A stretch of DNA of 63,705 bases, the filler included, from Octopus bimaculoides (taxonomy: Eukaryota): assembly GCF_001194135.2 (NCBI RefSeq). It is 6 parts of 5 records of this genome, joined end to end, with 100 filler letters (N's around TTAATTAATTAA, not from the genome) between each part and the next. Parts side by side here need not be neighbours in the genome. Positions count along the whole stretch, not along the records: positions 1 to 21,743 come from NC_068985.1; 5 more parts are not named here. One strand, written 5' to 3'. Position numbers and translations under genes: made by a program. The notes beneath the pieces were generated by a model. That model did no database searches. It worked only from the letters and a program-made list of their open reading frames with translations, and had not been told where the DNA came from. Below, piece by piece: positions 113 through 21,743 of the stretch; within the stretch, counting starts at the first letter, position 1, and each line of letters starts with the position of its first letter.

Positions 113-146
<34 letters not shown>

Positions 147-605: not shown

Positions 606-690
606 AAAGAATACATTTGCGGCTGAAGATAGCTTTATACTATGATGCAACAACTATAAAGCTTGAAACACATGTACCGCAGAATCCTTT
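606..690 (+). ncRNA. Type I hammerhead ribozyme motif (probably from a PLE pseudo-LTR)
   Basis: Core CTGAAGA 623-629 and GAAA 665-668. Stem II 631-639/655-663 is 9 perfect bp with U630.U664 at its base. Stem III is ACA/TGT with a 2-nt loop. GTA triplet 674-676. Stem I 616-622/677-683, then an ACA bulge and 6 of 7 further pairs. Confidence 0.8.
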
Positions 691-729: not shown

Positions 730-905
730 ATATATATATATATAGTAATGGTACCATGTAAAAAAACACCCAGTACACTCTCAAAAGTGGCTGGTATAAG
801 GAAGAGCATCCAGCTGTAGAAACCATGCCAAAACAGACTATGGAACTTGGTGTGACCCCTTGCCTTGCCAGTAGCATAGAAAATGGATGTTAAATGATGA
901 TGATT
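730..905 (+). mobile_element. SINE with GGAAGGGCATCCAGCTGTAGAAAC central domain and (GAT)n tail, diverged copy
   Basis: Matches copies at 5568-5918, 61668-61826 and 63565-63705. The central motif resembles the V-SINE domain (from recall). Confidence 0.7.
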
Positions 906-1223
906 ATATGAATTCTGAGAATCATGCACCTAACACATGTATAATTTTTTGCATATTGAAATTAATACTACATGAAGAATGTTGTGAAGCAGCCATAATT
1001 TTCTAGAAGTCACATGGTTAAATAAGTCTATATTCACATCTCAAAACTTTGTTTTGTAAATCTTTCATAACACAAGAACCTCTTACCAAGTCAGACTAAC
1101 TCAATTAGGTGTTTTGGGGAACAACTAGTTTCAGACCAAAAGATCATTGATCAACCACTTGTACATAAAAAAAAAACAGCCTACTATTGATGATCTTATG
1201 AAATGTCTCACTTGTTCTTGCAG

Positions 1224-1604
1224 GTTAACTACAGTACACCAGACTTTATTGTCATTGTGGAGTTCCTGAAAGGATTTTGCTGCCTAAGTGTTGTGAAAGA
1301 TTTCTACAAGTTCCGCAAGTACAATCTACAGGAGACAGCCAGAGCACTGCAACGCCTGGCTGCAAATCAATGTGAAACCACAGAAGAACAACCAAATGCT
1401 ACAGCTCTAGCAGAGAGCACACCTGACACTAATCTCATTCATGCCAGCACTCTTGCTAAATCTGACTCTAAAAATGAATTAAGTGCTACCATTGTCAATT
1501 CCAAGGACAAGTTAAACACTAATAGATCTAACTGTACTGAAATACAGAATGATTGTAATCAGTCTAGTGAAAAATCAGAAACAGAAACTGGTGAGAAAGT
1601 TTAG
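1224..1604 (+). CDS. THUMPD1: THUMP domain-containing protein 1, last coding exon
   Basis: Acceptor ttgttcttgcag| at 1223, phase 0. VNYSTPDFIVIVEFLKGFCCLSVVKDFYKFRKYNLQE matches the recalled THUMPD1 C-terminal motif (VVEIIKAVCCLSVVKDYMLFRKYNLQE in human). An acidic low-complexity tail follows. Upstream exons are outside the window. Confidence 0.9.
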   Translation, partial: VNYSTPDFIVIVEFLKGFCCLSVVKDFYKFRKYNLQETARALQRLAANQCETTEEQPNATALAESTPDTNLIHASTLAKSDSKNELSATIVNSKDKLNTNRSNCTEIQNDCNQSSEKSETETGEKV

Positions 1605-1933
1605 CAAGAACTGTTGTGAACTAGTTCCATTGCTGGCAGCAGTGCAGATCGGATGAATTTTAAGAACGTGTGCAGTCTTTTGAAATCAACTCCCTAAGAT
1701 GTACTTTCCTGTTGTTTGTTTCATTCAGTTCTATTTAGTTGTAAAAATATCTGTTACCATTTCTTTAAACCCTGCTGTTCTGTTGTTATTTTTTATAGGT
1801 TTTATAGAAATGGGACACAGGTAAAGATATGGCAAAAACTCCAGTATATTACTGGTATTTATTTTGACAATCTTAAATGGAGTGACAAGAGAATCGGGTT
1901 ATTACTACTTTGGACCTTCACTTTTTGACATAT

Positions 1934-1939
1934 AATAAA
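1934..1939 (+). promoter_or_regulatory. Candidate polyadenylation signal of THUMPD1
   Basis: AATAAA about 330 nt after the stop, followed by GT-rich ttgtgtatg. Confidence 0.4.
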
Positions 1940-2664
1940 TTGTGTATGAAAGATTATTAATATAGATAAACCCATCATCAAAGTATCTGATATCTTACAA
2001 GAGATAAGTAGACAGACAAGTAGTTAAATAGATAGATATACTGGAGACAAGTAGTTTAACACAGTAATGAGTGATTCCCTGCTTTACTTACAGTTAGAGA
2101 TGTGATCACAGTATGGTGTAAGTAAGAGGACGCAAACAGCTGTCTCACCTGCTTGTCTGATATGTTATTGACCTGATCAACCACTGTCCACTGCAAACTC
2201 TTTTCAGGAACCAATTCCAAAGATGTTTTTTGATGCAAGAGTTTACTCCCAGACTGGAGTGTCTGATCTTCTTCAGTCCATCAGAAAAAAAGTGAAGCCT
2301 CATTGGTTGATCAGTGACCAACTCACTTTACATGACAAGCTGGTCTGACTGCAGACAAATGTTCTTTCAAAAACTAAAGAAACAAGGTTAGGAGGTGGCA
2401 TCTACAAACTGAACCAAGTTATTCCAATATGAGTTACACACAAATATTTTAATCTTTAATTGGTAAATCATCAATCAAATTAATTAATTAAAGTGAGAAT
2501 GAGGCAGAAAATGGTCAAGTTCTTGTTCCAAACCTCATCTGAGCATTTTTATCCATTGAGGGCCGTGATGTTCTTTAATTACCTTCATTTCTGTTGACAA
2601 AAAAAAATAACAGAGAAATGTTTTAAATACTGAATAATGTAAAATGAATGAAATACAAAGGTTA

Positions 2665-4909: not shown

Positions 4910-5505
4910 CTGTGAAAGATGATAAAAGTAGAATGAGTAAACTGTCCACTGGACAGCAATATCAATTACAGCAGTAACACACCAGCATCAGTTGTCAAGC
5001 GATGTTGTGGGGACAGACACACATATATATATATACATATATATACGATGGGCTTGTTTCAGTTTCCGTCTACCAAATCCACTCACAAGGCGATAGTAGA
5101 AGACACTTGACCAAGCTGCCATGCAGTGGGACTGAACCCAGAAGCATGTGGTTGGTAAGCAAGCTACTTACCACACAGCCACTCCTGCACCTAAAATTTT
5201 AGTAAGACCCTTTAATGCAGGCCCTGGGTGAGACTGAACCCTGCTCAGGATGGTCAATGTAGTTGTCTGCTTATGTCTCTACCCACAAGGCCACCAAGAC
5301 ACCCATATATATATATATATATTTCGAAACGCCGGTGTTAAAACAGGGGTAGCTGATGAAGGAAAATGTTCTCTATGTGGCTTGTGTGTTTTCTTGTCTA
5401 CGTTTGTTTGCAATGTCCTGTACCCAGATATGCACCTATACATACAGATGGATGTCGGTATGCACATACCTGTACGTATATATGCCTATACTCATTTACT
5501 ATTTG

Positions 5506-5567
<62 letters not shown>

Positions 5568-5569
<2 letters not shown>

Positions 5570-5918
5570 ATTTTGAGCGTGACCGTTGCCAGTGCCGCCT
5601 GACTGGCCTTCGTAGGGTTTTCGAGTGAGATCGTTGCCAGTGCCCCTGGACTGGCTTTAGTGTGGGTGGCACATAAAAGACACCATTTCGAGCGTGGCCG
5701 TTGCCAGTACCACCTGACTGGCCTTCGTGCGGGTGACACGTAAAAGCACCCACTACACTCTCTGAGTGGTTGGCATTAGGAAGGGCATCCAGCTGTAGAA
5801 ACTCTGCCAAATCAGATTGGAGCCTGGTGTTGCCATCCGGTTTCACCAGTCCCCAGTCAAATCGTCCAACCAATGCTAGCATGGAAGGCGGACGTTAAAC
5901 AATGATGATGATGATGAT
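5568..5918 (+). mobile_element. SINE (V-domain-like, RTE-type tail) with three internal tandem units
   Basis: Repeats of TTCGAGCGTGRCCGTTGCCAGT...GACTGGCCTT, then the GGAAGGGCATCCAGCTGTAGAAAC domain and a GATGATGAT tail. Confidence 0.8.
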
Positions 5919-6088
5919 ACACACACACACACACACACACTGACAAACAGAGAGTATCAACAGATGATCGTAAAACAAGGTTGTTTAGAGAAAGGCAAAA
6001 GACAAAGTTGTTTAAAGAAAGGCAAACGTATTCATTTGTAACAATAGTAAAGGGAGTCAGAAGGAAGAGATGTAAATATGTCACTAAC

Positions 6089-6328
6089 CAAATGAAGTCC
6101 CAGTTTCATATTTTTCTGATTATTCTTCATTTCCCCAAAGCTTGTCTCTAATTCGTTGATACGCATAGCCAGTTTATCAACAACATCTCTCTGAAGGTTT
6201 GGAGTCTGTGAGGCACTGAACAATAACTGGTTGTTCTTGTTCTCTTCAATCTGTTTCATGGCACTGTTTAACATTGTCTGCAAAAGTTCTTGTTTGTTTT
6301 CAATTTCTTTGATTTTCGAAATCGGTCC
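6089..6328 (-). CDS. PAN/coiled-coil gene, exon GPISKIKEIENK...KLGLHL (80 codons)
   Basis: Acceptor tttctctctccag| and donor |gttagt, phase 0-0. Heptad-like E/K/Q/L-rich sequence. Confidence 0.85.
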
Positions 6329-6827
6329 CTGGAGAGAGAAAGCAAAAAGAAAATATCTCATGCTTCAATAGTAACACACTGCATTGTAGGGGAACCTATG
6401 AAGCCACCCCATCTACAGGGTTGCGCAATTTGCTAGAAATTGAAAATTTACCCAACAACTACTCACTGCATCTATCCTGTCACCATCTACACACAGTCCT
6501 TATTTGGTTAACATCCACCCTGTTATCATCACACAAATACACCACCTTTGTTGTATTCCTCTCAGGGGACTTGCAGAGAAAAGACAACGAGTTGTACAAT
6601 TTAGTTATTACATTTATTTACTAATTACATACAAAGAACGCACTCACCGAATGTTCATTATTAAGAAACAAGAATCATGTCCTCGCCATATATATCAATA
6701 ACATTTCACTTTCACAATCACACAAAACAACAATGAAACAAGGACCTCAGACGAACTACATTGAAACACAGGACCTCAGACAAACAAACAAATCTAACAG
6801 TTCATATAATAACCTTGATTATCTTAC

Positions 6828-13800: not shown

Positions 13801-16466
13801 CAAAATCTGATCCTTGGATGCCTTTAACACAGTTCATTCTGTTGCAAGCATTTCAGCCAGATCTCTGGTCTGAGAATAAATTCCTTCTTTCTTGCTTTCC
13901 TCCCACCTGTCTCAGTGGCCCGAAAAAGATCATGGGTTCTGCCCTTCCTCCTTGGACTAAGCAATATAAGAAAAATATAAAAAAGCCATTACATATTTGT
14001 TTTCATTTAGGATTACATATCATTTATTATGATGTTGCATTTGATATTATTTATTATTACGTAGCATTAGACACCATTTGTTGTCATGCAGTATATTAGA
14101 TACTATTTGCTAGTGTCTTAATTAACAAGGAGAGGATTTTTGTGTAGTTGCACAACCTTCTAGAAATAACAGATCGTACACCTACATAGAAGCTTTCTCT
14201 CTCTCTTTCCTATTTTCCCAAGTCACACCCTATTGTCTTGGATAATGTATTCTTAGACCCACTAGGTCTGAAACATAAGTGATAACCATGAATGGAATGC
14301 TTTTAATTATAGGTCTACTTGACCAAAGCCTATATGAAGCTTAAAAAAAGAAAGCATCAACCAGTCCTGTTCACCCTTCAAGCAATTTTCAAAATATTCC
14401 CATAATAGTGGGATACAACAAGCAATTGTAAGCCTGAAGCCTCAGAAATTCCAGAATAATGTCATTTTTTAAATTTGGATGTCTCTATTTGAGGTTAGTC
14501 TGCTACTGTTCTTTTCATCTGTTATAATTCCATCAATATTTACCATTCTATTAGTTTGTTACTGTTCTATTGATCTGTTACTATTCCATCTATATGTTAC
14601 CATTCTATCAGTAATTTTTCAATTAAGGACAATCAGAACAAATAATAGTAATGTTCTCTCCTTCTTAGAAGAATCAATGAAAATTGCTACGAATCTAGAG
14701 AAAACATACCATAAAGTGACACCTTTCAAACACTCATAAACAACACACAACTCAAAGCATCATTGATCTTATAAATGCTGAATTCTTATCTAATTTCAAA
14801 TTTTGGCCCAAGGCTAGCAATTTCAGAGGGGTGATAGTTGATTACATTGACCCCAGTGCTCAACTGGTCCTTGTTTTATCAACCCTGAAAGGATGAAAAG
14901 TCGACCTTAGCAAAAACTGAACTCAGAACATAAAGCCCAACAAAATGCCACCAAGCATTTTGCCCTGCATGCTAACAACTCAGCCATCTCACTACCTTGA
15001 GTTCTTATCTAATTGAAGTATTGGCTGGTCGTTGTAGATATGAAAGAATCCAAAAGCCCAACATATATTTTAATCCTAAACCTCTACTGTCCTGTTTTAC
15101 AAAATGGTAAATATGTCTTGCATTAGAATACTGCACACATATAGATTCACATACACACCCATATTCAAGACCACATCAAAGAAAACCCACTTGACTTACT
15201 GCCCTTCACTTATTAACGCAACTATCTGGATCTCTATGAAATCACCAAATACTATCTACAAATATCTCTTGTATTCACTGTTACTCTCAAACAGTATTAT
15301 TTGTTTCAGCATCCTGTACAATACATGGGTACATCCACCTCTATGTACTCATAATTCATACTCAGTAACTGAAACTAAATACAGGAATCCCTTGCTTTAT
15401 GGAAGTAATGTGTTCCTGAAAATCTGGCTGTAATGCAAATTGCATAATGCGAAATCAATTTTCATACTGATTTTCATATTATCAAGTGAGATTGTGTTCC
15501 TAAGAAAATAACAGAGAACAAGCGATATGATTGCCTTGATACATGAAAATAACAAATTCTAAACATACACAGTACAATATAGACACATAAAACACAAAAA
15601 CATTTTCAAAAGAATACATTAGGGAATTAATAAGAATTGTAATATTGTAAGAGTACATTCTTATCACAAAAGATGTTGACTACTGTGTGAGGTGGGGGTG
15701 GAGTGAAGAAAAAAGCGTTACTAGGAGGATGAGAGACAATATTTACAATGTTATAATTCATTATCACCAACATCAGCTTGAGGGGTGAAGAACTTATCCA
15801 AAGTTGTTTCTTGTTTATGGTGCATCATCTCTTTCTACAGCACAGTATAGGAACTGAGATCATTGTAAATTCCTTTTGTAAGTTTTGTTATGTTCATAAT
15901 TGGAATCATTATCAGCAAAAACCTACACACTTTCCTCTATAAGTGCCAAACATTAAGGAATAATTTTTGCAGTCAATTTAAGTGGTGCATCACAATATCC
16001 TTCTGAATTTGATGTAGACTTTCTGCTTGAGTTTCTGAGTTTCTGTAAGAGCAAAATTACTGACCATATCCCAAAAGGAAGGAAGGAAGGAAGGAAGGGA
16101 GGGAGGGAGGNNNNNNNNNNNNNNNNNNNNNNNNNNNNNNNNNNNNNNNNNNNNNNNNNNNNNNNNNNNNNNNNNNNNNNNNNNNNNNNNNNNNNNNNNN
16201 NNNNNNNNNNNNNNNNNNNNNNNNNNNNNNNNNNNNNNNNNNNNNNNNNNNNNNNNNNNNNNNNNNNNNNNNNNNNNNNNNNNNNNNNNNNNNNNNNNNN
16301 NNNNNNNNNNNNNNNNNNNNNNNNNNNNNNNNNNNNNNNNNNNNNNNNNNNNNNNNNNNNNNNNNNNNNNNNNNNNNNNNNNNNNNNNNNNNNNNNNNNN
16401 NNNNNNNNNNNNNNNNNNNNNNNNNNNNNNNNNNNNNNNNNNNNNNNNNNNNNNNNNNNNNNNNNN

Positions 16467-16700
16467 TGGCAACGATCTTACTTGGCTTGCCGGGTCTTCT
16501 CACGCACAGCCCATTTCCAAAGGTCTCGGTCCGTAGTCATCGCCTCGGTGAGGCCCAATGTACGAAGGTCTTGCCTCACCACCTCAGCCCAGGTCTTCCT
16601 GGGCCTACCTCTTCCACGGGTTCCCTCAACTGTTAGGGTGTGGCACTTTTTCACGCAGCTATCCTCCTCCATTCTCACCACATGTCCATACCAGCGCAAT
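16467..16700 (-). mobile_element. RTE-clade LINE, 3' end of ORF
   Basis: LRWYGHVVRMEEDSCVKKCHTLTVEGTRGRGRPRKTW is the typical RTE C-terminus (LRWxGHVxRM...RxRGRPRxxW). Confidence 0.9.
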
Positions 16701-17171
16701 TGGTTTGAATTAATCAGGTATTATCTTGTATCTTTGACATATCGATGATGTGATTGCTTATCTTTAGAATAATATTGTAGGTAGGTGAGAGAGGCCAGAT
16801 CTGGCCAGTTTGAAAATAATACAGGTAAGTTATTTTGGCTGGATATGACTGGTTTAAGTGCTAAAGGGTTAAAGTAAGAAGTTTGTATCCTAAAACCAAG
16901 AACAGTCCCAAGCAGGTTAGTATCAAAAGAGTTACAAGTGTCAAACCACATGTTTTTAGCTCCTAAACTTCAAAACATCATGCTCCATGAATCAAATAAA
17001 GTAGAAAAAAGACTAACCTTTTGTAGAAATACCAGTGAAATGGATCTCTTGATCAGTTAAATTTGAGTTATAAGTTAGCTCAAGCAGAGCTGGTCAAAGT
17101 TAGCCAAAAAATAACAGCTATTATATCATTGCTACTAAGTTGTACCTAAAAATAAGGAAAATATTTTATAC

Positions 17172-17597
17172 CTTCTGACGTGCATACAAAACTTCTTGTT
17201 TGATAGTTTCCAAGTTATGTTGCAGCGTTTTGTCTCGCATGTTAATCTCAGCCAAGCCCTTGCTCAAATTATCGGATTCTATTTTTACATTTTTCAATTC
17301 TACTGGAATTACAGATGTCTTATCTTGGATGTTTTCAATCTGTGCAGTCAGATCACTTAACATATGTTTGATCTGTGATTGTTTCTTTTCAAAATTGAAC
17401 TGAGTCTTCTTGAAGGCTGCAACATCAGCCATTGTTTTTTCCATGTTCAAAATGAGGCTCTCTACTTTTCGGTTCAGTTTGTTCATCTCCATTTCTTGCT
17501 GCACTTTACTGTTTTGTAGCTCATCGATTATTTGAGATTTTGTCTTTGATGCCTTCTCAGCCTCCAATCGCATCTCACTGACCTTTTGTCGAATTTC
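17172..17597 (-). CDS. PAN/coiled-coil gene, exon EIRQKVSEMRLEAEK...LYARQK (142 codons)
   Basis: Acceptor ttttattctccttgaaag| and donor AAG|gtataa, phase 0-0. Long heptad-like ORF. Confidence 0.88.
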
Positions 17598-18145
17598 CTT
17601 TCAAGGAGAATAAAATGGAAGAAAATTATTAAAAGAGAAAGGAGGAGGAGAATGTAAAAATATTCTTGTATCAGTCATAATCATGAAATGTGAGTGGTTT
17701 AGTAGATAGGGAATAGGACAACCAGCTAGGAGGTCAATGGATCACATATATACACACACATACAATCAGCAACAGTCCCTGTCTCTTAAGAGTAGAACAT
17801 GAGAATTTCATGTTGCTTTGTTTTAACTTTACATCCACCTCTTGTTTCTTAAATCAACAGCATGCAACCATAAGACTCTCTCCAACCCACACTTTATCAT
17901 CTACCTAATCCACTCACAAGGCTATAGTAAAAGACACTTGCCCAAAGTGTTGCACAGTAGGATTGAACCCCAAACCACATGGTCAGGAAGCAAACTTCTT
18001 AGCTGTATAGCCACACATCCATCTCACAGTCAAACCTGCATCTTTGACACTATATCTATATAAAAGATGCTAGACTCCTTTTAATCATAGTTCTGCTGGA
18101 TCAACGAAAGCCTAGGTCAAAACAACAACAAAAAAGTGTCCTTAC

Positions 18146-18279
18146 ATCAAAATCTTCTATGTCTTCTCTCAGCTGATTGACTTTACTCTGCAGAGCTTCA
18201 AGTTTACGCTGGGTGCCCTCACTCATTCCTTTGTACAACTTATTGTAGTCTTTAGTTTCGGTAGTGACATCTATGGCTG
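18146..18279 (-). CDS. PAN/coiled-coil gene, exon AIDVTTETKDYNKLY...DIEDFD (5' boundary 18279, or ATG at 18331 in an alternative model)
   Basis: Donor GAT|gtaagg. Acceptor gttattgtttggcctttattag| in phase 1. In-frame ATG at 18331 gives a hydrophobic N-terminus. Confidence 0.8.
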
Positions 18280-18807
18280 CTAATAAAGGCCAAACAATAA
18301 CATGGATTAAATGCAGTGCAACATAAAACATTATCCCCCAAATATTATTATCATCATTATCAACATTATTTTCATATTCAACATTATTGCCATCATCAAC
18401 ATTGTTTTCATCATCACCTTCAACCACATTGTTATAATAAGCACCATATTCATCATAATCATCATCATTAGAAACAAGTCAACAAGAAAGGCCTTTATGC
18501 GGTCGCTGAATCTGCTAGAAATAGCAACCAACTCTTTTCTTACATCCTACCATCTAAAACAGGAAAAGACACACTAAATAATGTAGTCCTGTATTCCTCT
18601 AAAAAGACAGGGTGGTCACTACAAGAATACCTTTGGTTACAGTCTAAAGTTGACCTGGTGCTAAACATCATCATCATCATCATAAACAGACCCAACAATA
18701 AAACCTACAATTCAATCATCATTCTGTTAGCAAATATTTTTGTTTCTTTTTTTTTTTAATTTACATGTTGAGAAAAAAAATTTATTAAAACAGCAGATAT
18801 TTCTTAC

Positions 18808-21213: not shown

Positions 21214-21392
21214 TTGACTCATCTTAACATCTTGATTTAAGCTCAGTTTATGTCATCATCCACCCTTCCATTTTTCCTGTTAGTCTTACAAGTTACAAGG
21301 TAACCCCTGTGGAGGCACATGGCTTAGTTGTTAGAGTGTTGAACACCAGGATTGCAAGGTTGAGGTTTTGATTCCTAGATTGAGTGACACTG

Positions 21393-21615
21393 CATGACAC
21401 TTTTTCACACAGCTGTCCTCGTTCATTCGCAACACATGACCCATACCAGCGCAGTTGTCTCTCTTGCACACTACATCTGATGCTTCTTAAATCCAACTTT
21501 TCTCTCAGGATGCTTACACTCTGTTGTGCATGCACACTGACATTACACATCCAGCGGATGTCCTCAGCAGTCATGGCCCATGTTTCATTGCCATGTAGCA
21601 TGGCTGTTCACACGG
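21393..21615 (-). mobile_element. RTE-clade LINE fragment
   Basis: MLHGNETWAMT...LREKLDLRSIRCSVQERQLRWYG. Same clade as 16467-16700. Confidence 0.85.

Positions 21616-21691: not shown

Positions 21692-21743
<52 letters not shown>

What the first reader, a model, noticed from the sequence alone, without database searches (positions are those of the whole stretch)
606..690. Near-intact hammerhead ribozyme in sense orientation in the probable last intron of THUMPD1
Seen: complete core (CUGAAGA, GAAA, GUA), 9-bp stem II, 3-bp stem III with a 2-nt loop, and 7-bp stem I extended past an ACA bulge by 6 more pairs. The one atypical position is U.U at the base of stem II. Known: metazoan Penelope-like elements carry minimal hammerheads with very short stem III that may act as dimers, and a bulged stem I supports loop-bulge tertiary contacts in natural type I hammerheads. 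Inference: this copy could cut the THUMPD1 pre-mRNA between 676 and 677, about 550 nt before the last acceptor, and so affect splicing or output. The intron assignment assumes the previous exon lies upstream of the window.
Basis: partly seen in the sequence, partly recalled or inferred. Interest (0 to 1): 0.8.

Follow-up and report, generated by a model that had tools for sequence, protein, structure and literature searches.

The report
Lone hammerhead ribozyme motif in intron
A single, well-formed hammerhead (self-cutting RNA) motif lies in sense orientation in the intron before the last THUMPD1 exon; it is most likely a stray copy left by a ribozyme-carrying retroelement and, being alone and weakly built, probably does little to the gene.

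Summary
The motif is really there at 606-690 (+). It has CUGAAGA, GAAA and a GUA cleavage triplet, a 7-bp helix I, a 9-bp helix II and a minimal helix III, with predicted cleavage at 676/677. That site is 547 nt upstream of the acceptor of an exon whose start matches the end of the THUMP domain of THUMPD1. It is far better than chance: about 3e-6 to 8e-6 expected per window, and the best of 719 decoy cores reached 13 stem pairs against 19 here.

It is not a textbook hammerhead:
- No Rfam hammerhead model scores it, even at E<=10.
- The pair next to the core (10.1-11.1) is U.U.
- The "3 bp + 2-nt loop" helix III is sterically impossible; it is really 2 bp plus an ACAU tetraloop.
- The competent fold takes only 3-5% of the predicted ensemble.
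- No second copy exists in the window to form a dimer.

The architecture does match known metazoan retroelement hammerheads: long helix II in Penelope-like elements, and U.U plus a 2-bp helix III in axolotl retrozymes. I found no homologue, orthologous intron or flanking element remnant, so family membership and conservation remain untested.

Most likely this is a solitary retroelement-derived hammerhead, slow or dead as a monomer, with no demonstrated effect on THUMPD1.

The parts
606..612 (+). Distal extension of helix I, 5' strand. It pairs with 684-690: 6 pairs interrupted by an A610.C686 mismatch.
   Evidence: Read from the sequence. Not part of the MFE fold, which pairs 609-615 with 690-696 instead.
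613..615 (+). ACA bulge in the 5' strand of helix I
   Evidence: Sequence. This is the same strand as the helix I bulge of the Schistosoma type I hammerhead (own knowledge). The distance does not match the length of helix II here.
616..622 (+). Helix I, 5' strand (UUUGCGG). It pairs with 677-683: 7 bp, including one G.U.
   Evidence: Descriptor scan. P(helices I+II) is 0.68-0.78 in local context, 0.45 in 300 nt and 0.08 in 500 nt.
623..629 (+). Core box C3-A9: CUGAAGA (N7 = A)
630..664 (+). Helix II hairpin. U630.U664 mismatch at positions 10.1-11.1; 9 Watson-Crick pairs, 631-639 with 655-663; 15-nt loop at 640-654.
   Evidence: The hairpin is stable in every context tested (P 0.70-0.85).
665..668 (+). 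Core box G12 A13 A14 A15.1: GAAA
668..675 (+). Minimal helix III: A668-U675 and C669-G674, closing an ACAU tetraloop. The third pair, A670-U673, would leave a forbidden 2-nt loop. ACACAUGU is one G-to-A change (at a CpG) from the perfect palindrome ACACGUGU.
   Evidence: infinite energy for the 3-bp form; P(I+II+III) is 0.03-0.05. The palindrome remark is inference from the sequence.
676..677 (+). Predicted scissile bond: after A676 (H17 of the GUA triplet) and before C677 (N1.1)
   Evidence: Hammerhead numbering applied to the sequence. No cleavage data exist.
677..690 (+). Helix I, 3' strand (677-683), plus the distal extension (684-690)
1224..1604 (+). Last coding exon of a THUMPD1-like gene. 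Acceptor ttgttcttgcag|GTT at 1212-1223; stop codon at 1602-1604. The motif lies in the intron upstream, on the same strand.
   Evidence: sequence; Pfam THUMP C-terminal end, E=0.059; PDB 2DIR, human THUMPD1, E=0.02; related-species ORFs P0001 and P0002
254..334 (.). (TA)n / (TTTTA)n low-complexity tract. Together with (TA)12 at 721-744 it brackets the roughly 400-nt block that carries the motif near its 3' end.
   Evidence: Reading this as a microsatellite insertion target is inference from PMC8557442.
745..915 (+). SINE-like repeat immediately downstream. It is not part of the hammerhead unit.
   Evidence: Copies at 5742-5830, 3306-3252(-), 10077-9954(-) and 13447-13407(-), none with a hammerhead upstream. 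It is present at the same place in related-species contig L001.

Best explanation
This is a solitary type I hammerhead motif left in the THUMPD1 intron by a hammerhead-carrying retroelement. The source would be a Penelope-like-element terminal repeat or a monomer of a non-LTR retrozyme-type repeat. When transcribed as part of the pre-mRNA it can in principle fold into three helices around an intact catalytic core and cut itself after A676.

As a lone copy it is expected to cleave slowly or not at all. Helix III is only 2 bp, the pair next to the core is U.U, helices I and II have mismatched lengths, and there is no partner for a dimer. It therefore most likely rides along in the intron without a role in THUMPD1 expression.

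Shown: the motif, its statistical excess over chance, its strand and its position relative to the exon.
Inferred: the retroelement origin, the low activity and the lack of effect on the gene.
For: (1) All 11 invariant core positions plus H17 are present, and helices I and II are long (7 and 9 bp). The motif is unique in the window.

(2) Chance expectation is about 3e-6 to 8e-6 per window. Descent from a real hammerhead is therefore far more likely than coincidence.

(3) Its unusual features are those of known metazoan retroelement hammerheads:
- Helix II of 7-8 bp and a very short helix III in Penelope-like elements (PMC4209133).
[quoted passage not shown] (4) Octopus genomes carry Penelope families (PMC13282606 and PMC8967140). 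Canonical Penelope-like elements universally carry hammerheads (PMC8557442).

(5) Dispersed monomers in introns are commonplace. About 43% of Xenopus retrozyme copies overlap introns (bioRxiv 10.64898/2026.07.22.740005).

(6) The motif sits about 40 nt upstream of a (TA)12 tract, with another (TA)n tract about 400 nt upstream. Penelope-like elements insert preferentially into (TA)n and carry the hammerhead near the 3' end.

(7) Weakness as a monomer:
- The hammerhead-competent fold takes 3-5% of the ensemble. Helix I is lost in longer context.
- The local fold z-score is -0.67.
- No second copy was found by descriptor, BLAST, covariance model or local alignment.
Against: - No homologous copy was found anywhere, so membership in a repeat family is not shown.
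- No reverse-transcriptase or endonuclease remnant, or any other protein-coding trace, lies in the flanks.
- The 381-nt block is not unusually self-paired (z = +1.07), unlike retrozyme RNAs.
- G10.1-C11.1, a hallmark of Penelope-like-element hammerheads, is absent.
- Loop 3 is not palindromic.
- Rfam models do not score the motif.
- Activity was not measured, so 'slow or dead' is inference.
- Only 605 nt upstream of the motif are visible.
Confidence: 0.6

Rival explanations
1. Domesticated intronic ribozyme. The motif self-cleaves the THUMPD1 pre-mRNA at 676/677 and thereby tunes splicing of the last intron or mRNA output. It would work like the amniote intronic hammerheads or the CPEB3 ribozyme.
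For: - Sense orientation with an intact core, 547 nt upstream of the last acceptor.
- Precedents exist: conserved intronic hammerheads in RECK, CTCL and DTNB (PMC6155905).
- An intronic ribozyme whose inhibition raises CPEB3 expression (PMC10919898).
- A U.U at 10.1-11.1 does not abolish cleavage in axolotl HHR_Amex2.
Against: - No conservation evidence could be obtained.
- No Rfam hit, including the intronic HH9 and HH10 models.
- The competent fold is only 3-5% of the ensemble.
- No dimer partner.
- Kinetics (inference): polymerase needs only seconds to tens of seconds to cover the 547 nt to the acceptor. The closest natural analogue cleaves 22% per hour as a monomer, about 0.004 per min. 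Even a good coral retrozyme hammerhead reaches only about 0.8 per min.
- Retrozymes are statistically depleted from introns, which suggests active sense copies are selected against.
Confidence: 0.1
2. Chance look-alike. An AT-rich 9-bp hairpin happens to be flanked by CUGANGA and GAAA boxes and by complementary arms, with no hammerhead ancestry.
For: - The motif is simple, and consensus-conforming sequences are expected by chance in large databases (PMC3088659).
- Hairpins of 9 bp or longer are 2-3 times more frequent in this window than in Markov sequence.
- The features outside the search descriptor are not the canonical ones: N7 is A, 10.1-11.1 is U.U, loop 3 is not palindromic, and there are no recognisable loop-loop contacts.
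- No Rfam hit and no relatives found.
Against: - Expected about 3e-6 to 8e-6 per window and at most about 1 per whole genome at this stringency.
- The best of 719 decoy cores reached 13 stem pairs against 19 here.
- About 90 kb of unrelated control loci gave a single loose hit, with a 2-bp helix II.
- Genomes with Penelope-like elements hold hundreds to thousands of true copies, so the prior odds favour descent.
Confidence: 0.07
3. It is the visible end of a larger or still active element, such as a tandem retrozyme array or a full Penelope-like element, whose remainder lies upstream of the window edge. In that case a dimer partner would exist and the RNA would be processed for transposition.
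For: - Only 605 nt upstream of the motif are visible.
- Hammerheads of these elements normally come in tandem or in both terminal repeats.
Against: - Positions 1-335 are low-complexity (TAT)n, (TA)n and (TTTTA)n, with no similarity to the hammerhead block.
- No coding remnant lies upstream.
- Downstream come a SINE and the THUMPD1 exon, so no element body follows.
- Retrozyme units are 150-450 bp, so a neighbouring unit should already be visible within 605 nt. It is not.
Confidence: 0.08

Closest known systems
Minimal hammerheads of metazoan Penelope-like elements (Cervera & de la Pena 2014, PMC4209133)
   Same: - Type I topology and an intact core.
- Unusually long helix II (7-8 bp there, 9 bp here).
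- An extra or unpaired nucleotide right after A9.
- A very short helix III with a C15.2-G16.2 pair.
- Mostly found as single dispersed copies.
- Low activity as monomers.
   Different: - G10.1-C11.1 is highly conserved there and is absent here (U.U, or A-U with a spare U before G12).
- Helix I is longer here (7 bp against 4-5 bp).
- Loop 3 (ACAU) is not palindromic.
- No terminal repeat, reverse transcriptase or endonuclease lies nearby.
Type I hammerheads of non-LTR retrozymes, especially axolotl HHR_Amex2 (Cervera & de la Pena 2020, PMC7229834)
   Same: - A U.U mismatch at the base of helix II.
- Helix III of 2 bp capped by a tetraloop.
- AT-rich surroundings.
- Weak cleavage as a monomer is to be expected.
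   Different: - Retrozymes are tandem repeats of 150-450 bp giving highly self-paired circular RNAs. Here there is one copy, no repeat unit and no excess structure (z = +1.07).
- Helix II is 9 bp rather than about 4 bp.
- No sequence similarity was established.
Conserved intronic hammerheads of amniotes (RECK / HH9, CTCL-C10orf118 / HH10, DTNB)
   Same: A type I hammerhead in sense orientation inside an intron of a protein-coding gene, thought to derive from retroelement hammerheads.
   Different: - Those are ultraconserved across species, match Rfam models, have canonical 6-bp and 4-bp helices with loop-loop contacts, and cleave as monomers.
- None of that is shown here, and Rfam gives no hit.
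CPEB3 HDV-like intronic ribozyme
   Same: A self-cleaving RNA in an intron upstream of an exon. Its cleavage competes with splicing and lowers host gene output (PMC10919898).
   Different: - It belongs to a different ribozyme class.
- It is conserved in mammals.
- Its measured half-life matches polymerase transit time.
- Nothing comparable is known here.
Schistosoma Sm-alpha hammerhead (the crystallised full-length type I motif)
   Different: There the bulge docks on the loop of a 4-bp helix II. Here helix II is 9-10 bp, so loop 2 lies about half a helical turn beyond the bulge.

Membership tests
Hammerhead ribozyme, type I | Invariant core: C3 U4 G5 A6 N7 G8 A9, G12 A13 A14, A15.1-U16.1, and H17 not G | tested here: met
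   CUGAAGA at 623-629, GAAA at 665-668, A668-U675, A676
Hammerhead ribozyme, type I | Three helices radiating from the core, with the open end at helix I | tested here: met
   Helix I is 7 bp and helix II is 9 bp. Helix III is only 2 bp plus a tetraloop, because the 3-bp form with a 2-nt loop is forbidden.
Hammerhead ribozyme, type I | Standard pairs directly next to the core (1.1-2.1, 10.1-11.1, 15.1-16.1), the curation rule of Perreault et al. 2011 | tested here: not met
   C677-G622 and A668-U675 are fine. 10.1-11.1 is U630.U664. The rule is quoted. A natural exception with U.U exists.
Hammerhead ribozyme, type I | Score at or above the gathering threshold of an Rfam hammerhead covariance model (RF00163, RF00008, RF02275-7) | tested here: not met
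   No hammerhead match at gathering score, nor at E<=10 on 550-750 or 604-692
Hammerhead ribozyme, type I | Helices supported by covariation among homologues | tested here: inconclusive
   No homologue was retrieved. ORF-based protein searches, collection pattern scans and in-window searches were all negative. The related contigs stop at position 811.
Hammerhead ribozyme, type I | Site-specific self-cleavage giving 2',3'-cyclic phosphate and 5'-OH ends | not testable with these tools
   Needs an in vitro transcription and cleavage assay, or RNA end mapping.
Hammerhead ribozyme, type I | Tertiary contact between loop or bulge 1 and loop 2, needed for fast cleavage at physiological Mg2+ | tested here: inconclusive
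   The bulge lies after 7 bp of helix I, while loop 2 lies after 9-10 bp of helix II. Canonical figures are 6 and 4 bp. No 3D modelling was possible.
Penelope-like-element minimal hammerhead | Located in the terminal repeat of an element that encodes a reverse transcriptase and a GIY-YIG endonuclease | tested here: not met
   No such ORF or Pfam trace in the 605 nt upstream or downstream. A 5'-truncated solo fragment cannot be excluded.
Penelope-like-element minimal hammerhead | [quoted passage not shown] | tested here: inconclusive
   The long helix II and the C-G at 15.2-16.2 are met. U630 can be read as the extra nucleotide. G10.1-C11.1 is not met. Loop ACAU is not palindromic, though it is one CpG transition away from ACGU.
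Non-LTR retrozyme | Tandem repeats of 150-450 bp, each with a type I hammerhead | tested here: not met
   A single copy. The covariance model's next best hit is 14 bits, E=0.2. The flanks show no similarity to the hammerhead block.
Non-LTR retrozyme | A highly self-paired monomer RNA | tested here: not met
   336-716 folds no better than shuffles (z = +1.07).
THUMPD1 (host gene assignment) | A THUMP domain followed by the THUMPD1-type C-terminal tail | tested here: inconclusive
   Only the last 24-26 residues of the domain are in the window. Pfam THUMP gives E=0.059, below the cut-off. The best PDB match is human THUMPD1, E=0.02. The upstream exons lie outside the window.

The most novel reading that the evidence does not exclude
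The motif is a domesticated, evolutionarily conserved hammerhead in the last intron of cephalopod THUMPD1. It would cleave co-transcriptionally, perhaps helped by host factors or a non-canonical tertiary contact made by its long helix II. It would thereby set the level or the 3'-end choice of the mRNA for a tRNA/rRNA acetylation cofactor. This would be the first regulatory intronic hammerhead outside amniotes.
Probability: 0.06. Interest if true: 0.6.

Novelty: new member of a known kind. Interest (0 to 1): 0.3.

Why it matters
If it is only a stray retroelement hammerhead, it is ordinary. Such motifs occur by the hundreds to tens of thousands in many animal genomes, and nearly half of them sit in introns. 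It would still be a small addition, because the literature search found no paper describing a hammerhead in an octopus genome. The motif also combines traits of two described classes: the long helix II of Penelope-like elements, and the U.U plus 2-bp helix III of retrozymes. If it proved conserved and active, it would extend intronic ribozyme control of host genes from amniotes to molluscs and give a tractable case for how slow ribozymes compete with splicing.

Tried and rejected
- **Rfam cmscan:** the whole piece at gathering score, and two small ranges at E<=10. No hammerhead family matched. The hits were weak chance matches to mir-9, snoRNAs and ZNFX1-AS1.
- **Orthologous intron:** the THUMPD1 exon peptide found two Logan ORFs. 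Their contigs, L001 and L002, are 85-87% identical in DNA but begin at window position 811, inside the SINE. L003 has only 271 nt upstream. None reaches 606-690.
- **ORF trick to fish repeat copies or orthologues from assemblies:**
  - The frame spanning the motif (593-721) and the frame at 427-594 gave no candidates.
  - The exhaustive representative search gave three hits that are ORFs through unrelated tandem repeats, scoring by summed weak matches. One was fetched (L012, a 188-bp satellite) and has no hammerhead.
- **Exact look-up of the window's own exon ORF:** not on record.
- **Pattern scans:** two metagenome scans found nothing. A 17-mer scan of viral contigs gave eight chance matches with no hammerhead context.
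- **tRNA scan for a SINE head:** none.
- **Pfam on flank reading frames:** nothing.
- **Second-copy or tandem-unit hypothesis:**
  - The covariance-model hit at 878-950 (14 bits) and the shared 10-mer AACACATGTA (667-676 and 931-940) are not significant.
  - An alternative register, with a 5-bp helix III (668-672 with 690-694) and cleavage after 695, has only a 4-bp helix I made mostly of G.U pairs. I rejected it.
- **Complementarity of 667-690 to exon 1269-1292:** this includes 12 contiguous pairs, 679-690 with 1269-1280. About 9 such helices are expected by chance in 1.3 kb, so it is not significant.
- **Run accession search:** looking up SRR11869391 to name the related species found nothing.

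Full report
**What is in the sequence**

On the + strand, 606-690 reads AAAGAAUACAUUUGCGG-CUGAAGA-U-AGCUUUAUA-(15 nt)-UAUAAAGCU-U-GAAA-CACAUGU-A-CCGCAGAAUCCUUU. In hammerhead numbering:
- C3-A9 is 623-629, with N7 = A.
- G12-A15.1 is 665-668.
- U16.1 is 675.
- H17 is A676, so the scissile bond would be 676/677.
- Helix I is 616-622 with 677-683: 7 bp, one of them G.U.
- Helix II is 631-639 with 655-663: 9 Watson-Crick pairs and a 15-nt loop.
- The pair next to the core, 10.1-11.1, is U630.U664.

First, a 3-bp helix III closed by a 2-nt loop is not an allowed hairpin; the energy model returns infinity for it. The real helix III is A668-U675 and C669-G674 closing an ACAU tetraloop. Second, the distal '6 more pairs' of helix I contain an A610.C686 mismatch, and the predicted fold does not prefer them.

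**Is it more than chance?**

Yes.
- A loose descriptor (I>=3, II>=2, III>=2 bp) finds this locus and nothing else on either strand of the 21.7-kb piece.
- In 40 Mb of first-order Markov sequence modelled on the window, the rate was 0.003 per window at (5,4,2) and zero at (7,5,3). Extrapolating at about 0.39 per extra pair, and an independent analytic estimate, both give about 2.6e-6 per window for (7,9,3).
- I also ran a control that keeps the real sequence: 719 permutations of the two core boxes scanned on the actual window. The best decoy reached 13 stem pairs against 19 for the true core.
- Real sequence has 2-3 times more hairpins of 9 bp or longer than the Markov model. I therefore put the figure at about 5-8e-6 per window, or roughly 0.1-1 per 2.7-Gb genome.

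**What speaks against a textbook hammerhead**

- Rfam's hammerhead models give no match at gathering score. They also give none at E<=10 when only 201 or 89 bases are searched.
- One large curated survey discarded any candidate with a mispair at 10.1-11.1 (PMC3088659).
- The local fold is no more stable than shuffles (z = -0.67).
- Helices I+II occupy 68-78% of the ensemble locally, 45% in 300 nt of context and 8% in 500 nt. Adding helix III brings the competent fold down to 3-5%.
- Canonical type I motifs place the interacting loops after 6 bp (helix I) and 4 bp (helix II).

**What it resembles**

Each oddity has a precedent in hammerheads carried by animal retroelements.
- Penelope-like-element minimal hammerheads have a helix II of 7-8 bp, an extra nucleotide after A9 and a vestigial helix III. 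They occur mostly as single dispersed copies and cleave poorly, only as dimers or with an artificially extended helix III (PMC4209133).
- Invertebrate retrozyme hammerheads have a 2-bp helix III capped by a tetraloop.
[quoted passage not shown] It cleaves 22% in one hour as a monomer and efficiently as a dimer (PMC7229834).

Octopus genomes contain Penelope families, and canonical Penelope-like elements universally carry hammerheads. In Xenopus about 43% of retrozyme copies overlap introns, and monomers are evenly dispersed.

The motif lies about 40 nt upstream of (TA)12 (721-744), with another (TA)n/(TTTTA)n tract at 254-334. That is compatible with insertion of a roughly 400-nt, 5'-truncated element end into a TA microsatellite, a known target preference. 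This is suggestive only.

Helix III plus its loop reads ACACAUGU. That is one G-to-A change at a CpG away from the perfect palindrome ACACGUGU that dimer-forming hammerheads show. This hints at an aged copy and is inference.

**What could not be shown**

I found no relative of the motif.
- In the window, BLAST, the descriptor and a covariance model of the motif run with filters off give nothing. The next best hit is 14 bits, E=0.2.
- The flanks carry no diverged second unit.
- The downstream repeat (745-915) is a SINE-like family whose other copies lack the motif.
- No reverse-transcriptase or endonuclease trace lies nearby.
- The 381-nt block is not rod-like (z = +1.07).
- The only related-species DNA I could fetch (L001 and L002, 85-87% identical) starts at window position 811. 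Conservation of the motif is therefore untested.
- Attempts to fish copies from assemblies through spurious ORFs, and by pattern scans, all failed or gave chance hits.

**Host gene**

The exon starting at 1224, after ttgttcttgcag, encodes VNYSTPDFIVIVEFLKGFCCLSVVKDFYKFRKYNLQE...
- Its first 24-26 residues match the C-terminal end of the THUMP domain (Pfam positions 61-84 of 84, E=0.059).
- The best solved structure is the THUMP domain of human THUMPD1 (2DIR, E=0.02).
- The stop codon is at 1602-1604.

The THUMPD1 assignment and the intronic, sense position of the motif are therefore reasonable. They rest on a truncated domain and on upstream exons that lie outside the window.

**Mechanism and verdict**

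I think the most likely reading (about 0.6) is a solitary retroelement-derived type I hammerhead that is transcribed within the intron but cleaves slowly or not at all. The cleavage site is only 547 nt from the acceptor, which polymerase covers in seconds to tens of seconds (own knowledge of elongation rates). The nearest natural analogue cleaves at about 0.004 per min as a monomer (derived). Even an efficient coral retrozyme hammerhead reaches only about 0.8 per min. An effect on splicing is thus unlikely unless host factors accelerate cleavage.

The rivals are:
- a domesticated regulatory ribozyme (about 0.1);
- a chance look-alike (about 0.07);
- the edge of a larger element lying upstream of the window (about 0.08).

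The finding is a new member of a known kind and of modest interest. The genome-wide family search and the orthologous-intron alignment listed under next steps would settle it quickly.

Noticed in passing
window 745-915 (+); copies at 5742-5830 (+), 3306-3252 (-), 10077-9954 (-), 13447-13407 (-): A SINE-like repeat family with the core GCATCCAGCTGTAGAAACC...GACGTTAAA and a (GATGAT)n tail. The copy at 745-915 is present at the same place in related-species contig L001, so it predates the split of the two species.
   Followed up: partly
window 16478-16699 (-) and 21293-21601 (-): Two ORF fragments of the type '...LRWYGHV.RM...GRPRKTW...', similar to each other (16641-16702 matches 21395-21457). 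From memory they look like the C-terminal part of a non-LTR (LINE) retrotransposon ORF. Pfam gave only noise.
   Followed up: partly
window 16111-16466: An assembly gap of 356 N next to the LINE-like fragment.
   Followed up: no
window 17166-17573 (-), 18101-18427 (-), 6032-6361 (-): Minus-strand ORFs rich in coiled-coil-like sequence, with weak Pfam matches to CENP-F, tropomyosin and similar families. They may be exons of a neighbouring gene that converges on THUMPD1.
   Followed up: no
window 667-690 and 1269-1292: The 3' half of the motif is complementary to part of the THUMPD1 exon: 18 of 24 Watson-Crick pairs, with 12 contiguous pairs between 679-690 and 1269-1280. This would compete with helix I. 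About 9 such helices are expected by chance in 1.3 kb.
   Followed up: yes
window 113-146, 254-334, 721-744, 5306-5321, 5510-5567, 21696-21743: Many (TA)n, (TAT)n and (TTTTA)n microsatellites. Several directly adjoin repeat insertions, and the piece ends in a (TA)n run.
   Followed up: no
window 1605-2060; L001 715-1148: The sequence after the stop codon stays about 85% identical to the related species over about 450 nt, no less than the coding part. AATAAA lies at 1934 and ATTAAA at 2487. This is probably the 3' UTR.
   Followed up: no
L012 2864-4653 (NCBI GCA_023525975.1, CM042027.1): An unrelated eukaryotic 188-bp satellite (9.5 copies, 98% identical) that is read as a 287-aa ORF in the protein library. 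It matched the query only through summed weak repeats.
   Followed up: yes
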